A stretch of DNA of 64,000 nucleotides from IMGVR_UViG_3300023199_000204:252474-316473, one strand, 5' to 3'. Counted from the first letter of the stretch, positions 13,889-62,833 are shown. Program-made: numbers and translations. Notes: generated from the sequence alone by a model not told the origin.

Positions 13889-14641
13889 ATGTCTAAAAAG
13901 AGAGAAGATATAGATAAAAAGAAAGATATAATAATTTCTATGCTTAAATCAGGAATTTCTAAGGCAGAAGTCTGTAGATATCTTAAGTGTAAATATATAA
14001 CTCTAAAATCTAGATTGGATAAATGGGGATGTAACATAAAAAATACGCATAGAAAAAGTTTCCCGAGACTCAATAATAGAAAACACGTATCTGAATATTT
14101 ACATCACGACAGTAATATTAATTCTTTTAAGCTCAAAAAAAAATTATGGCAGGATGGTTATAAAGCAAAATTTTGTGAAGAGTGTGGAATATATAAATGG
14201 CGTGGAAAACCAGCACCTTTAGAGTTAGATCATACTGATGGTTACAAATTTAATAATTGTATAGAAAATTTAAAGATTCTGTGTGCAAACTGTCACGCTA
14301 AAAAATCAACTAATGGTGGGAAAAATAAAGGTACTTATAAAATTAGCTCCGTCTCTCAATTGGCAGAAGAAACGCGCTTAGACCGCGTACGGTGTGAGTT
14401 CGAATATCACCGGAGCTATAATAAAAAATCTAAAAATAAATGTATTGATTGTAAAAAAGAAATAAAAAAAACTAGTAAAAGGTGTAAGAAATGCTTTTCT
14501 CTCAGTTCAAGAAAAATAGAATGGCCTCCTGTAGAAAAAATACTAGAAATACTAAAAGAGGAAAATTATACAAAGCTTGCTAAAAGATTAGGAGTGACTG
14601 ATAACGCAATTAGAAACTATTTAAAAAGAAACAATAAATAG
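13889..14641 (+). CDS. HNH endonuclease with N- and C-terminal HTH-like regions; contains an embedded tRNA
   Basis: CEECG..LELDHTDG..NN..NLKILCANCH; C-terminal CxxC pairs and LAKRLGVTDNAIR. Confidence 0.85.
   Translation: MSKKREDIDKKKDIIISMLKSGISKAEVCRYLKCKYITLKSRLDKWGCNIKNTHRKSFPRLNNRKHVSEYLHHDSNINSFKLKKKLWQDGYKAKFCEECGIYKWRGKPAPLELDHTDGYKFNNCIENLKILCANCHAKKSTNGGKNKGTYKISSVSQLAEETRLDRVRCEFEYHRSYNKKSKNKCIDCKKEIKKTSKRCKKCFSLSSRKIEWPPVEKILEILKEENYTKLAKRLGVTDNAIRNYLKRNNK
14345..14418 (+). tRNA. tRNA with Leu(TAG) anticodon and short variable loop, inside the HNH ORF
   Basis: AGCTCCG/CGGAGCT, ACGCG-CTTAGAC-CGCGT, GTGAG-TTCGAAT-ATCAC. Confidence 0.8.
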
Positions 14642-15407: not shown

Positions 15408-15617
15408 ATGATAGAAGCTCTTTTTGTCGTAGAAGGTTCGCAGGCTTATAATGCTGGTGTTAGGAAAGGTGATAAAATACTTGCCTTTAATGATGTTGTT
15501 GTTAAGTCTTTAATAGATTATATAAGAGCGAAGAGAAATTCAGGCGAATATGAAACCATTCTCGTTAGTAGGTATGGAGAACAAAAGTATTTTAGATGGA
15601 AAAAGAATAGAGGGTAG
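15408..15617 (+). CDS. Small PDZ-domain protein
   Basis: VVEGSQAYNAGVRKGDKILAFND. Confidence 0.7.
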   Translation: MIEALFVVEGSQAYNAGVRKGDKILAFNDVVVKSLIDYIRAKRNSGEYETILVSRYGEQKYFRWKKNRG

Positions 15618-15698
15618 GCATATGTTGGTTTGATGCGACCGCCTGCTAAGCGGTTGGCTCCGTGATGGAGTCCGCGAGTTCGATTCTCGTGCCCTCTG
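15609..15698 (+). tRNA. tRNA-Ser(GCT)
   Basis: ACCGC-CTGCTAA-GCGGT, long variable arm. Confidence 0.9.
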
Positions 15699-15733
15699 CT
15701 TAAAGGAGAAAGAATGAGATTTTGAATATCTTG

Positions 15734-24556: not shown

Positions 24557-24628
24557 GACGTGCTCCTTGGGACTGAGGGTTAGGCTCTGCAAAAGCTTGA
24601 ATTTGGGGTTCAACTCCCCAGCACGTCT
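24557..24628 (+). tRNA. tRNA-Cys(GCA)
   Basis: GACGTGC/GCACGTC, CTGCAAA loop, U73. Confidence 0.85.
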
Positions 24629-27641: not shown

Positions 27642-27714
27642 GGGTTTGTGGTGTCAATGTAGCATATTCGCCTCTTAAGCGAAAAGGTGATGGGTTCAAG
27701 TCCCTCCGAGCCTA
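27642..27714 (+). tRNA. tRNA-Lys(CTT)
   Basis: GGGTTTG/CGAGCCT, TTCGC-CTCTTAA-GCGAA. Confidence 0.85.
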
Positions 27715-43947: not shown

Positions 43948-44427
43948 TTGAACATATTTATTTTAGACAATGATTTAAAAAAATGTGTTGAATATTATGT
44001 AGATAAGCATTGTGTGAAAATGATATTAGAACATACTCAAATTTTATGTAGCGTTCATCACATATCTGGTTCTAAATTAGAAATACCATATAGGAAAACA
44101 CATCAACATCATCCAGTTGTTAAATGGGCAACAAAAAGCCTAAGTAATTATAATTGGTTAATTAAGCTGACAGAAAGCCTTTGTAAAGAATATTCTTATA
44201 GATATGACAAAATTCATAAATGTGAAAAAGTTTTAAAATGGGCAAAAGAAAATACGCCAAATATTCCTGAGTTAGGATTAACTCCATTTGCCCAAGCAAT
44301 GCCTGATGATTGTAAAAATGAGAACACGGTGGTTGCTTATCGCAACTATTATAGAAAGCATAAGAGGCATCTTTTTGCTTGGAAAAGGAGAGAGCCTCCT
44401 TACTGGATAAAGGATGAAGAGAATTGA
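43948..44427 (+). CDS. Pyrimidine dimer DNA glycosylase / endonuclease V family protein
   Basis: MNIFILD..DKHCVKMILE..Q.L, YRKTH..HP..W, EY..RY.K.H, FAQAMP, AYRNYY. Confidence 0.78.
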   Translation: MNIFILDNDLKKCVEYYVDKHCVKMILEHTQILCSVHHISGSKLEIPYRKTHQHHPVVKWATKSLSNYNWLIKLTESLCKEYSYRYDKIHKCEKVLKWAKENTPNIPELGLTPFAQAMPDDCKNENTVVAYRNYYRKHKRHLFAWKRREPPYWIKDEEN

Positions 44428-44897
44428 TTTTGAAAAACTCACATATATAGCTAAAAATAATGGTTTAAAAGCAATAGTTTCTCACGATTATTGGATTGAG
44501 CCACTTGAATATTATGGACACGTCGCTTTATTCTACAATAATAATGAAGTTGGAAGGTTTTGTTATGAGGATAGAGGTGAGTCTAAAACTGGAATAAGAT
44601 TATTTTCTATTCATAGTGATCTTGATCACGAACATAACGGAAAGGGTTGGGGCCTTCTAGGATATTTATTATTGTTAGAACAACTACAAAAAAAGTTTCC
44701 AAAATCCTATGTTGGTCCAAGCGAAGAGTTTGGTTCATATACTTCTCCAAGTGCTGCGAAAGTATGGGAAATTATCATAAAGAGCAAAATACTTAGGACT
44801 TCTATGTTAAGTCCAGTAATAGGGAAAGTAAATAAAGTAAGAGTTTTTAAATACATAGGACCCAAGATATTAGGAAATGTAATAGGCAAGTTTAAGG

Positions 44898-44969
44898 GGG
44901 TCCATAGTTTAGGGGAAGAACGCTGCTTTGACGTAGCAGAAGTCGAAGGTTTAAATCCTTCTGGACCTA
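44898..44969 (+). tRNA. tRNA-Val(GAC), inside the 3' end of ORF 44414..44986
   Basis: GGGTCCA/TGGACCT, CTGCT-TTGACGT-AGCAG. Confidence 0.85.
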
Positions 44970-46724
44970 TAAGGAGGGAAATATGAAAACAAATTGGTGG
45001 GAAAGCATTAAGTTTAAGGTCTTAATGTTTATTATATATATAAAGTATAAATTAAAAAGTAAAGAATGACAATATTAAAAAAAATGATTAATTACATAAA
45101 GTCAGTTTTTAACAGAAATAAATATCCAGAACTTAGAACTATATCTAAAGAAGAAGCTGAAATAGTTTGTGAGCATATTAATAATGACACAGAAACAAAA
45201 AAGGCTTGGAAAACTATAATGCTTTCTTTATTTGGAGATAGAATGCCTCATTCATATAAATATAATATATGGTATGGTTTTGAATTACCAAAAGTTATAA
45301 CTCACGAGTTTTTAAACAATCTTTTATATAAAGTTAATAATGATGAAGATATGCCGAGGCATCAAAAAGTATTTGTTACCAAAATAATTAATAAGATGTT
45401 AGAGCACAATATTGATTACCCAATAAAAAAATATAATACTGATACTGAAGAGTTAATGAATAAGTTGGAAAGTTTCATCACTGAAATTTCTTCCAGTTGT
45501 AAAAGGGAGTAGTTTTTTGGACCCAAAAGATTTTAAAGAATTTTTTAACAAGAATTTAACAAAAATTTTGGAAACAGATAATCATTTAAAAGTTGAGGAA
45601 GGTATAATTAAAAACTGGGCTTCTGGAGAATGGGCTCCAATGTCTCCATATTGTAGGGAATATTTTGTAAATGAATTTTCTAAACTTCTTAATTTTAAGA
45701 AAAATAATAAAGTTTCTTTTTCAAAAAAGAAAAAAACATCAGAGATAGATAAATTAGTTAAGTCAATTTTACAGGAGGTTGGTGTTGGATAGAAGGTTAA
45801 GAAGACACTTAATTTCAGAAAAAAGAAGAATATTAAAACCATATATTTGTTGGACAGAATGGTGTATGGATTGGGATTGTAGGCATATTGAAACCTTATG
45901 GTTCTATTAGCATTAAATAAAGCAAGATATAATGGTGACTTCGTAATTGATGATGAGGGTAATCGCAAACGCATAGATCTTTATTTAGGAATTTATAGAT
46001 CAAGTTTATAATCCTATCAAATTATATTTATATTTAGTAGGGGGACTTAGATGAAAATATCAAATTATTTACTTTTAATATGTTTGCCATTAGCCATATT
46101 ATTTCTTTCAATATATATGTCAGACATCTATGATGTGGTTTGCGATAGACAAACAAAGGGAATTATTAAGTTTTTTCAAAGAATTGGAGATTATTGCCAA
46201 AACTATATAGCAATTATAGTTTCTGTTTTAATAATATTAAGTGGTCTATTGAAGTTAGTGGAATTTTGTTTACAATAAAAAGGTAATATATGTATAAGTA
46301 TAAATTTCCTATTGGGGATTGGTCAAAAGATGGTCACGAAAAATGTGAATGGTTTTTGGTTCACGGTCTAAAGCCTGTTGAAGAAGTTAGAGAAGCTCAT
46401 TATGAGGCAGAGAAACTATTGGGATTTTCTATTGGTGACATATGTGGTCAATATGAGGAAAATTATATTACTAAAGAGTATTTAGAAAAATTAAATGAAT
46501 TGAGAATCTATCTTCCTGAAATAGATGTAGAAGAATATTCTAAGCGTTTTTGTCCAAACGCAGAAGAGTTGCTACATATATAGCTTAATATCCTTAATAA
46601 AGTTGATGAAAGTTTAGAATTATCTTTACTTCCAAAGGAAGAGGATTACCCAACAATCAATTTTTATGGTTTTGATGAGAAGGAACGACATCTAAGAACT
46701 CCTGGGTATGGTTTATTTTATTAA

Positions 46725-59220: not shown

Positions 59221-59574
59221 GGGGACGAAATGGATTCGACAGAGGCGACAAAGATAAATAAAGCAAGTAAGGGAATGTCTATTTTCTCTTTGAAAAATAT
59301 AGGCAAAAATAAGTAACGAAAATTACGCACTTGCTGCCTAATTAGGTAGCACATCTGAAGTTTTCTCTCACTCGTGACGGAACTTCAAGATGTCAAATGA
59401 ACGAGGTAATAATTATTCTTTTAGCGATTGGGAATAATTATGAAATTTTAATTGCTTCGTAATTTAGTAGCTTGTTTATGGGCGACTTTATTATTAAATT
59501 AAATCATAAACTAAACTTGTAGATGTCTTTATTATTGAGTTTCTGGACCCGGTTTTCGAAGGCCGGCGTCTCCA
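59221..59574 (+). ncRNA. ssrA: tmRNA
   Basis: GGGGACG-AAATGGATTCGAC 5' end, CGTCTCC-A 3' end with G3:U70, tag frame NENYALAA* at 59315-59341. Confidence 0.93.
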
Positions 59575-59789
59575 AATAAATAAAAGAGAGGAGTTAAAAG
59601 ATGAAAGAAGTGAAAATATTTGAATTTTCAGCAGCTAATTTTTCTAAATTGGAATCTGATATTAATGAAAAAATACGTAATGGATATAAATTAATATCAC
59701 TTTTGCTTTTATATCGGTCAGAAGACCCCTTAAAGGGAAATAAATATGAAGCCGTTTTTGAAAAACCATGAACTTAATAAATTATTAAC

Positions 59790-62759: not shown

Positions 62760-62833
62760 TCACCCATAGCTTAACGGTAAAGCGTCCAGCCCTAAGCAAG
62801 CAGGAGTTCTCGGTTCGATTCCGTGTGGGTGAT
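62760..62833 (+). ncRNA. tRNA-like RNA with aberrant anticodon arm
   Basis: TCACCCA/TGGGTGA, canonical D and T arms, TCCAGC-CCTAAGCAA-GCAGGA (9-nt loop). Confidence 0.7.

What the first reader, a model, noticed from the sequence alone, without database searches (positions are those of the whole stretch)
14345..14418. Complete tRNA inside an HNH endonuclease reading frame
Seen: a well-paired cloverleaf lies on the same strand between the HNH domain and the C-terminal Zn-finger/HTH region with the frame open throughout. It carries a Leu anticodon but lacks the long variable arm typical of bacterial tRNA-Leu. Inference: dual coding; tRNA maturation would cut the nuclease mRNA and limit expression, and charging identity may be atypical.
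Basis: partly seen in the sequence, partly recalled or inferred. Interest (0 to 1): 0.6.

Follow-up and report, generated by a model that had tools for sequence, protein, structure and literature searches.

The report
tRNA-Leu gene nested inside homing endonuclease
A large phage carries a complete tRNA-Leu(UAG) gene in frame inside the flexible linker of an intact HNH homing-endonuclease gene, so cutting out the tRNA should destroy the nuclease message; this is a rare extension of a known habit of such nucleases to abut tRNA genes.

Summary
A 74-nt tRNA (anticodon UAG, 14345-14418, Rfam 42.1 bits, also called by ARAGORN) lies on the sense strand inside a 250-codon ORF (13889-14641). Contigs from three metagenome runs give the same sequence.

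The ORF is a full-length relative of phage T5 F-TflIV: HTH, HNH, linker, Zn ribbon, HTH. The tRNA fills residues 153-177 of a linker that varies greatly in length across the family and is modelled with low confidence. The C-terminal module is intact, has no start codon of its own, and can only be translated through the tRNA.

In a census of 71 relatives, 47 sit directly beside a tRNA-Leu gene. Many end in the first 10 nt of the tRNA, using U8-A9-G10 as their stop codon. None contains a tRNA, so this window extends a family habit.

The missing long arm is not odd. About half of the tRNA-Leu genes in these phages are short, and this one keeps the bacterial LeuRS identity elements. It does have a broken G53-C61 pair, unique among 302 phage tRNAs checked.

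Competition between tRNA excision and nuclease translation is plausible, with precedent in T4 segB and selB/selC, but no RNA data exist to test it. I rate it a new variant of a known kind.

The parts
13889..14641 (+). ORF of 250 codons plus stop: free-standing HNH homing endonuclease of the T5 F-TflIV type. GGAG lies 5 nt upstream of the ATG.
   Evidence: PHROG 10822, E 7.5e-26, residues 9-246 against profile 7-243 of 245. (T5 hegA/F-TflIV, 33% identity over residues 5-246).
13889..14026 (+). N-terminal helix-turn-helix module (residues 1-46).
   Evidence: AlphaFold2 model: four helices, pLDDT 85-96. Aligns with the N-termini of T5 F-TflIV and the short-form relatives.
14096..14341 (+). HNH (His-Me finger) nuclease domain with CxxC...CxxC zinc site, ending in the conserved tail GKNKGTYK.
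   Evidence: Invariant C96, C99, H115, N127, C132, C135 and H136 across 33 relatives. pLDDT above 94.
14345..14418 (+). tRNA-Leu(UAG), 74 nt, class-I shape (5-nt variable loop), A73, no CCA, G53.A61 mismatch. It also encodes residues 153-177 of the nuclease linker.
   Evidence: ARAGORN; Rfam, 42.1 bits, with alignment. (aligns with long tRNA-Leu(UAG) apart from a clean loss of the variable arm). (the only G.A at 53-61 among 302 tRNAs).
14420..14494 (+). Short basic linker remainder (NKKSKNK) and four-cysteine Zn ribbon (C185, C188, C199, C202).
   Evidence: Family alignment. pLDDT 87-90.
14531..14638 (+). C-terminal helix-turn-helix DNA-binding module (motif GVTDNAIRNYLKR). The only in-frame start-like codon after the tRNA (GTG at 14594) lies inside it.
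   Evidence: C-terminal part 46-50% identical to long-form relatives, E down to 2e-19. (pLDDT 92-97). (start codons).

Best explanation
Shown:
- The locus is a single intact gene for a two-module HNH homing endonuclease of the T5 F-TflIV family.
- Its interdomain linker contains a complete sense-strand tRNA-Leu(UAG) gene.
- The nuclease belongs to a clade that habitually sits directly beside phage tRNA-Leu genes. In many members the ORF ends in the first 10 nt of the tRNA. Here the frame runs through the tRNA and resumes the family's Zn-ribbon/HTH module, which has no start codon of its own.

Inferred:
- One transcript has two exclusive fates. If it is translated unprocessed, it gives the full-length 250-aa enzyme, with a 25-residue tRNA-encoded stretch in a flexible linker.
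- If RNase P and the 3' processing enzymes excise the tRNA, the message is severed. The 5' piece, encoding HTH-HNH, ends without a stop codon and should be a substrate for trans-translation. The 3' piece has no start codon.
- tRNA maturation therefore holds nuclease production down, as proposed for T4 SegB and the T5 F-Tfl enzymes.
- The tRNA is probably leucine-accepting, because it keeps the bacterial LeuRS identity set. Its broken G53-C61 pair may weaken folding or processing and so shift the balance towards intact mRNA.
- The close tie to tRNA-Leu genes suggests that the nuclease's homing site lies in or next to such genes.

The confidence given (0.5) is for the whole statement including the inferred competition; the shown anatomy alone I hold at about 0.95.
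For: - tRNA and open frame.
- Sequence reproduced in three runs.
- Full-length family match.
- T5 F-TflIV runs from GKNIGRY through a further 7 residues straight to the first Zn-ribbon cysteine. The window has GKNKGTYK, then the tRNA-coded stretch, then NKKSKNKC.
- Linker length varies from about 5 to more than 60 aa in the family.
- AlphaFold2 gives pLDDT above 85 for both flanking modules and 49-66 for residues 141-180.
- The C-terminal module is intact and dependent on read-through: 0.05% of shuffles stay open, the other frames hold 8 and 13 stops, and the only start-like codon is a late GTG. It is 46-50% identical to long-form relatives.
- tRNA GC is 0.53 against 0.24-0.28 in the flanking ORF, so the stems are not decaying.
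- It is the only UAG-anticodon tRNA in the 316-kb record.
- Family habit: of 71 distinct relatives, 32 have a tRNA-Leu within 150 nt upstream and 16 have a tRNA-Leu overlapping or within 60 nt of the ORF end. A crude Fisher test gives OR 31, p 4e-26.
- The same HNH/tRNA(UAG) junction occurs in Salmonella phage S124 and in L009, and is inferred from the tRNA-like C-terminal tail of P0004.
- Literature: segB mRNA is cut between its last and stop codons during tRNA-Arg maturation, and the same idea is proposed for T5 F-TflI/II/IV (PMC2330249). A tRNA-Sec is nested in selB with the same hypothesis (PMC8124441). LeuRS identity elements are given in PMC9976931.
Against: - There is no RNA evidence at all: no RNA run holds the locus. 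Transcription, processing, aminoacylation and translation are all unobserved.
- G53.A61 breaks a pair that is G-C in 291 of 302 phage tRNAs checked and pairable in 10 more. The tRNA may be defective.
- The arrangement is a singleton. None of 71 related ORFs, 110 related proteins or 9 metagenome loci has a tRNA inside the ORF, so conservation cannot be shown and it may be a recent accident.
- About 1 frame in 5 is open across a tRNA by chance.
- The nuclease's target site is unknown.
Confidence: 0.5

Rival explanations
1. tRNA relic used as linker. The nuclease is functional and translated through the segment, but the tRNA no longer works as a tRNA. It is poorly folded or not processed and is simply tolerated as coding sequence for a variable linker.
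For: G53.A61 is the only unpairable 53-61 combination among 302 phage tRNAs. The Rfam score of 42 bits is at the low end for this genome's tRNAs, which range from 40 to 71. The linker tolerates almost any sequence and length. The minimum-free-energy fold of the isolated RNA is not the cloverleaf and has a z-score of only -2.2.
Against: All other stems are perfectly paired. GC is 0.53 inside an ORF of 0.24-0.28 GC, which a drifting relic in a 32% GC genome would lose. Conserved tertiary nucleotides and the Leu identity elements are all present. It is the only UAG-anticodon tRNA in the 316-kb record.
Confidence: 0.3
2. Decaying gene. Only the N-terminal HTH-HNH part matters, as in the many ~150-aa short forms. 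The Zn-ribbon/HTH part downstream of the tRNA is a remnant, and the frame through the tRNA is open by accident.
For: Short forms that end at the same GKNxGxY tail directly before a tRNA-Leu are common. 21% of frames across tRNAs are open by chance. Homing endonuclease genes often degenerate (general knowledge).
Against: The C-terminal 73 codons have no stop, against 0.05% of shuffles and 8 and 13 stops in the other frames. They keep all four Zn cysteines and the HTH motif, are 46-50% identical to long-form relatives and fold with pLDDT 87-97. Without a start codon of its own, this conservation only makes sense if the part is translated through the tRNA.
Confidence: 0.07
3. Artefact. A sequencing or assembly error, or a chimeric contig, joins two genes; or the cloverleaf is a chance match.
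For: The record is a metagenome assembly, and all supporting runs come from one study.
Against: Contigs assembled separately from two further runs cover the tRNA and both junctions with no differences or indels. The tRNA is found by two independent methods, with Rfam E 8e-8. The same HNH-tail/tRNA(UAG) junction exists in cultured phage S124.
Confidence: 0.02

Closest known systems
Phage T5 F-TflIV (hegA), a site-specific HNH endonuclease of the T5 tRNA gene region
   Same: Same architecture: N-terminal HTH, HNH with a CxxC...CxxC zinc site, Zn ribbon and C-terminal HTH. It is 33% identical over nearly the whole length. It is free-standing and sits among phage tRNA genes.
   Different: T5 hegA has a minimal linker with no tRNA in it, and it sits after tRNA-Ile2 rather than at a tRNA-Leu.
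T4 segB (GIY-YIG) and T5 hegC/hegD: homing endonuclease ORFs whose 3' ends overlap a downstream tRNA
   Same: Sense-strand overlap of a homing endonuclease ORF with a tRNA gene. Published evidence or proposal that tRNA maturation cuts the nuclease mRNA and lowers expression (PMC2330249). In T5, hegC overlaps tRNA-Ser2 by 14 nt and hegD overlaps the tRNA-Gln2 pseudogene by 23 nt.
   Different: There, only the last codons or the stop codon overlap the tRNA 5' end. Here the whole tRNA is internal and a functional domain lies beyond it. segB also belongs to a different nuclease family.
selC (tRNA-Sec) nested in the selB ORF of Alphaproteobacteria (Mukai 2021, PMC8124441)
   Same: An entire sense-strand tRNA lies inside a protein ORF. 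The same hypothesis is offered: folding and processing of the tRNA represses the full-length protein.
   Different: In selB the tRNA encodes a C-terminal extension with no domain after it, and the tRNA and protein work in one pathway. It is bacterial, not a mobile nuclease. It is also conserved across many genomes, whereas this case is a singleton.
Short-form HNH plus tRNA-Leu(UAG) junction in Salmonella phage S124 and uncultured phages (L009, P0004)
   Same: The HNH domain ends in the same GKNxGxY tail directly at position 1 of a short (74-75 nt) tRNA-Leu(UAG). S124 and P0004 use the same reading frame as the window.
   Different: Their frame stops inside the tRNA and no Zn-ribbon/HTH module follows.

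Membership tests
HNH (His-Me finger) free-standing homing endonuclease, F-TflIV / PHROG 10822 type | HNH catalytic motif with the flanking CxxC...CxxC zinc site | tested here: met
   C96, C99, H115, N127, C132, C135 and H136 are invariant in a 33-sequence alignment. pLDDT is above 94.
HNH (His-Me finger) free-standing homing endonuclease, F-TflIV / PHROG 10822 type | Whole-length profile match, including the C-terminal Zn ribbon and HTH | tested here: met
   PHROG 10822: E 7.5e-26, residues 9-246 against profile 7-243 of 245. T5 F-TflIV aligns over residues 5-246.
HNH (His-Me finger) free-standing homing endonuclease, F-TflIV / PHROG 10822 type | Free-standing gene in a phage genome, patchily distributed among related genomes, lying next to its presumed target | tested here: inconclusive
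   It lies in a phage tRNA array, and relatives flank tRNA-Leu genes in 47 of 71 cases. No genome close enough to this phage but lacking the gene was found.
HNH (His-Me finger) free-standing homing endonuclease, F-TflIV / PHROG 10822 type | Site-specific DNA cleavage and homing | not testable with these tools
   Needs enzyme assays and co-infection crosses.
tRNA (Rfam RF00005) | Covariance-model score above the gathering threshold over the full model | tested here: met
   42.1 bits against a threshold of 29, model positions 1-71 of 71. ARAGORN also calls it.
tRNA (Rfam RF00005) | Conserved G53-C61 closing pair of the T loop | tested here: not met
   G53.A61. This is the only unpairable case among 302 unique phage tRNAs.
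Bacterial tRNA-Leu | Long variable arm (class II shape) | tested here: not met
   The variable loop is 5 nt. It aligns with long tRNA-Leu(UAG) apart from a clean gap at the arm.
Bacterial tRNA-Leu | LeuRS identity elements as defined in E. coli: A73, A14, A15-U48, G18G19, A20a | tested here: met
   All are read directly from the alignment. The elements are listed in PMC9976931. The same short body occurs only with Leu anticodons: taa 18, tag 10, caa 7, aag 1.
Bacterial tRNA-Leu | Processed, CCA-tailed and charged with leucine | not testable with these tools
   No RNA run holds the locus.
ORF-tRNA overlap acting as an expression brake (T4 segB, selB/selC type) | Sense-strand tRNA within or overlapping the ORF on one transcript | tested here: met
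   Searches show the sense-strand nesting. All neighbouring genes and tRNAs are on the + strand, and no promoter or terminator signal exceeds the shuffle expectation; a shared transcript is inferred, not observed.
ORF-tRNA overlap acting as an expression brake (T4 segB, selB/selC type) | mRNA cleavage by tRNA maturation that lowers protein output | not testable with these tools
   Needs RNA end mapping and protein measurement.

The most novel reading that the evidence does not exclude
This HNH clade may be a tRNA-Leu-directed homing system that travels with its own arm-less tRNA-Leu allele. The loss of the variable arm and the insertion of the nuclease gene at the tRNA boundary would make that allele immune to cleavage. 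In this phage, nuclease and tRNA would then have fused into one unit, in which RNase P processing of the embedded tRNA gates production of the nuclease and the non-stop 5' fragment is cleared by trans-translation. On this reading, arm-less tRNA-Leu would be a widespread functional class of phage tRNA, whereas current reviews say tRNA-Leu carries the long arm everywhere except animal mitochondria.
Probability: 0.2. Interest if true: 0.75.

Novelty: new variant of a known kind. Interest (0 to 1): 0.55.

Why it matters
Homing endonucleases must be kept at low levels, and several phage examples are thought to achieve this by letting tRNA maturation clip their mRNA ends. This locus takes that logic to its limit. 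A whole tRNA sits between the catalytic and DNA-binding modules, so each transcript can yield either a tRNA or a nuclease, but not both. It is a compact natural construct for measuring how RNase P processing competes with translation.

Two wider patterns came out of the work. One HNH clade is tightly tied to tRNA-Leu genes, and arm-less tRNA-Leu are abundant in phage tRNA arrays. Both bear on how tRNA arrays are shuffled between phages, and on the textbook statement that tRNA-Leu always carries a long arm outside animal mitochondria.

Tried and rejected
- Megablast of the region against cultured phages found nothing.
- Scans of IMG/VR and JGI metagenomes with the whole protein found no close relative and no second case of the nested arrangement.
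- A word-index search with the C-terminal module alone (residues 176-250) found nothing. I had hoped to find stand-alone Zn-HTH genes downstream of tRNAs.
- The contig of P0004, the closest relative whose ORF tail looks like a tRNA(UAG), could not be fetched. Its tRNA is therefore inferred from the protein tail only.
- The closest long-form relative, P0005, has a long linker but no tRNA.
- I tested for a chimeric origin, with the N-terminal and C-terminal halves coming from different nuclease copies. The best hits differ between the halves, but P0005 scores well in both, so the result is inconclusive and I make no claim.
- The promoter and terminator scan found no more sites than in shuffled sequence.
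- A PDB sequence-profile search and Foldseek gave only weak matches. The top Foldseek hits were HNH nucleases (Cap5, McrA) at E above 0.1. NCBIfam gave only a sub-threshold hit on the ZorE HNH region.
- No RNA runs exist, so the reads tool could only confirm the DNA sequence.
- I considered and set aside excision of the tRNA followed by ligation of the mRNA halves. Removing exactly 14345-14418 would place TAA in frame immediately, giving only a short form, and nothing supports ligation.
- I also set aside an alternative genetic code. The frame is open under table 11, so none is needed.

Full report
**Context.** The window is the last 64 kb of a 316,473-bp IMG/VR virus record with 32% GC. It is a tRNA array. 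ARAGORN finds 27 tRNAs in the window and 32 in the record, all on the + strand, and Rfam finds a tmRNA at 59221-59575.

**The observation.** ARAGORN calls a tRNA with anticodon TAG at 14344-14419. The Rfam tRNA model matches 14345-14418 end to end at 42.1 bits, against a gathering score of 29 and with E 8e-8, when the region is searched on its own. The 56-kb gathering scan lost it to the speed filters.

- Read from the alignment, the acceptor stem (A1-U72 to G7-C66) and the anticodon stem are fully Watson-Crick.
- The D arm is of the tRNA-Leu type: a 3-bp stem, C13.A22, and the loop AAUUGGCAG.
- The variable loop is 5 nt, the discriminator is A73, and no CCA is encoded.
- The one real defect is G53.A61 at the base of the T loop.

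The ORF 13889-14641 (250 codons) is open throughout, and the tRNA covers codons 153-177. Contigs assembled separately from two other runs of the same study span the tRNA and both junctions with no differences (X2 14293-14474, X3 14308-14458).

**What the ORF is.** PHROG 10822 (HNH endonuclease) matches residues 9-246 in one stretch at E 7.5e-26. The best named relative is T5 hegA, the site-specific endonuclease F-TflIV of the T5 tRNA region. It is 33% identical over residues 5-246 (literature).

The zinc-site cysteines and the HNH residues (C96, C99, H115, N127, C132, C135, H136) are invariant in 33 relatives. An AlphaFold2 model gives pLDDT 85-96 for the N-terminal HTH, above 94 for the HNH domain and 87-97 for the Zn ribbon and C-terminal HTH. 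Residues 141-180 score only 49-66.

**Where the tRNA sits in the protein.** T5 F-TflIV runs from GKNIGRY to the first cysteine of the Zn ribbon with 7 further residues in between. The window reads GKNKGTYK, then the tRNA-coded stretch, then NKKSKNKC. Without the tRNA-coded stretch the linker would be as short as T5's. Across the family this linker ranges from about 5 to more than 60 residues with no conservation. The tRNA therefore lies in the part of the protein most tolerant of insertions.

**Is the C-terminal module still in use?**
- Its 73 codons contain no stop, whereas only 0.05% of composition-matched shuffles stay open.
- The other two frames contain 8 and 13 stops.
- The only in-frame ATG, GTG or TTG after the tRNA is a GTG 15 codons from the end.
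- It keeps all four Zn cysteines and the HTH motif, and it is 46-50% identical to the C-termini of long-form relatives.

An intact domain with no start codon of its own implies translation through the tRNA, or else a very recent origin.

**Chance.** In this genome 20 of 96 sense frames are open across a tRNA. This is the only tRNA with long open frame on both sides, 456 nt before and 219 nt after. An open frame across the tRNA alone is not remarkable. Its continuation into a homologous, intact domain is.

**The family habit.** Many short (~150 aa) relatives have C-terminal tails that read like translated tRNAs. Examples confirmed on DNA:
- Salmonella phage S124: the HNH ORF ends in GKNKGTYA and its last 6 nt overlap a 74-nt tRNA-Leu(TAG), in the same frame as the window.
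- L009: the ORF overlaps a 75-nt tRNA-Leu(tag) by 10 nt.
- L011: an 86-nt tRNA-Leu(tag) starts 43 nt after the ORF stop.

A census covered 71 distinct ORFs of the family, from IMG/VR, Logan and cultured phages.
- A tRNA-Leu lies within 150 nt upstream of the start in 32 of them, out of 40 that have any tRNA there.
- A tRNA-Leu overlaps the ORF end or starts within 60 nt of it in 16 of them, out of 23. One ORF (L059) has both, so 47 of 71 are flanked directly by a tRNA-Leu.
- A crude Fisher test of adjacency against Leu identity gives an odds ratio of 31 and p 4e-26. It is crude because it mixes per-ORF counts with unique-tRNA totals.
- The commonest overlap is exactly 10 nt, which means the stop codon is U8-A9-G10 of the tRNA.
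- None of the 71 has a tRNA inside the ORF.

The window is therefore one rare extension of a general pattern. This clade lives at the borders of tRNA-Leu genes, as expected if its homing site lies in or beside them; that last step is inference.

**The missing long arm.** Among 73 unique Leu-anticodon tRNAs in these phage loci, 36 are short (72-78 nt) and 37 are long.
- The short ones carry only Leu anticodons: taa 18, tag 10, caa 7 and aag 1.
- Many share a common body, with A73 and often G1.U72.
- The short UAG tRNAs align with long tRNA-Leu(UAG), including T5's, apart from a clean gap at the variable arm.
- The window tRNA keeps A73, A14, A15-U48, G18G19 and A20a.

According to the identity review PMC9976931, these are the E. 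coli LeuRS determinants. Neither the anticodon nor the long arm is crucial for identity, and variants lacking the arm remain active. The same review states that tRNA-Leu carries the long arm in all organisms except animal mitochondria. The abundance of arm-less forms in phages deserves its own study.

**Is the tRNA functional?**
- For:
  - Every stem apart from the 53-61 pair is intact.
  - GC is 0.53 inside an ORF of 0.24-0.28 GC.
  - All tertiary and identity nucleotides are present.
  - It is the only UAG-anticodon tRNA in the record.
- Against:
  - G53.A61 is unique among 302 phage tRNAs; 291 have G-C and 10 have another pairable combination.
  - The Rfam score is at the low end for this genome.
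  - The isolated RNA's minimum-free-energy fold is not the cloverleaf.

I put roughly 60% on a working, possibly weakened, tRNA and 30-40% on a relic retained as linker.

**Mechanism (inferred).** All neighbours are co-oriented, and no promoter or terminator signal exceeds the shuffle expectation, so the tRNA and the ORF probably share transcripts.
- An RNase P cut at 14344/14345 would leave a 5' fragment encoding HTH-HNH with no stop codon. This is a non-stop mRNA and a substrate for trans-translation. The phage itself encodes a tmRNA.
- The 3' fragment would have no start codon.
- Only unprocessed transcripts could give the full-length enzyme.

The same logic applies to relatives whose stop codon lies in tRNA positions 8-10. 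It matches the published case of T4 segB, whose mRNA is cut between its last and stop codons during tRNA-Arg maturation, and the proposal for T5 F-TflI/II/IV (PMC2330249; review PMC2988022). It also matches the hypothesis for tRNA-Sec nested in selB (PMC8124441). None of this can be tested here, because no RNA run holds the locus.

**Origin (unresolved).** There are three possibilities:
- A tRNA-Leu was inserted into a T5-like long form.
- The nested state is ancestral, and other lineages lost either the tRNA or the C-terminal module.
- A short form upstream of a tRNA-Leu fused with the C-terminal part of a second copy downstream. Both positions are favoured sites for the family.

The best hits for the two halves of the protein do not discriminate between these.

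**Verdict.** The dual-coding reading is structurally supported. The regulatory reading is plausible, has precedent and is untested. The identity concern is not supported. Relative to segB and the T5 heg genes (end overlap only) and to selB/selC (tRNA as a C-terminal extension), a whole tRNA between two functional domains of a mobile nuclease is a new variant of a known kind. It is a singleton in every collection searched.

Noticed in passing
window 44414-44986 (ORF) and 44898-44969 (tRNA-Val gac): A second ORF (190 aa) reads through an entire sense-strand tRNA and stops 14 nt after it, so its last ~30 residues are tRNA-encoded. This resembles the selB/selC case. NCBIfam finds no family for it.
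   Followed up: partly
window 62760-62833, and loci L003, L009, L016-L092: Arm-less (72-78 nt) tRNAs with Leu anticodons are about as common as long-arm ones in these phage tRNA arrays (36 against 37 unique sequences). They carry only Leu anticodons, and many share a body with A73. A current review says tRNA-Leu always has the long arm outside animal mitochondria. In the window's record both CUN decoders (tag and aag) are short, while the UUR decoders (taa and caa x2) are long. The aag tRNA has an ordinary 4-bp D stem, so it may be of a different kind.
   Followed up: partly
loci L003-L092 (71 distinct HNH ORFs): This HNH clade is tied to tRNA-Leu genes: 32 ORFs have one just upstream and 16 have one overlapping or just downstream. 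The downstream overlap is typically exactly 10 nt, so the stop codon is U8-A9-G10 of the tRNA. RNase P cleavage would then remove the stop codon.
   Followed up: yes
window 59221-59575: The phage encodes a tmRNA (Rfam RF00023, 121.6 bits, full length). It is relevant because tRNA excision from mRNAs would create non-stop fragments.
   Followed up: no
window 27642-27714; 14345-14418; 15609-15699; 24557-24628: The two tRNA finders disagree. Rfam calls a tRNA at 27642-27714 that ARAGORN misses. ARAGORN calls three tRNAs that the large gathering scan did not list; the one re-tested alone scored 42 bits, so the loss was due to the filters.
   Followed up: partly
L012 (phage T5, NC_005859 26000-38500) and L003 (phage S124): In T5, hegC overlaps tRNA-Ser2 by 14 nt, hegD overlaps the tRNA-Gln2 pseudogene by 23 nt, and T5.069 overlaps tRNA-Asn by 24 nt. 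At the same Ala-Leu-Ser locus, T5 has Ala, an 85-nt Leu(UAG), hegC and Ser. S124 has Ala, an F-TflIV-like short HNH, a 74-nt Leu(UAG) and Ser. The nuclease and the tRNA allele appear to have been exchanged together.
   Followed up: partly
G000 (whole record): CheckV's completeness estimate for this 316-kb linear record is only 18%. That would imply a very large genome, or it may be a poor estimate.
   Followed up: no
L009 1437-3193: In a related uncultured phage the tRNA array around the HNH gene also carries an RtcB RNA ligase gene and an Acb2/Tad1-like gene, which suggests a tRNA-repair or anti-defence neighbourhood.
   Followed up: no
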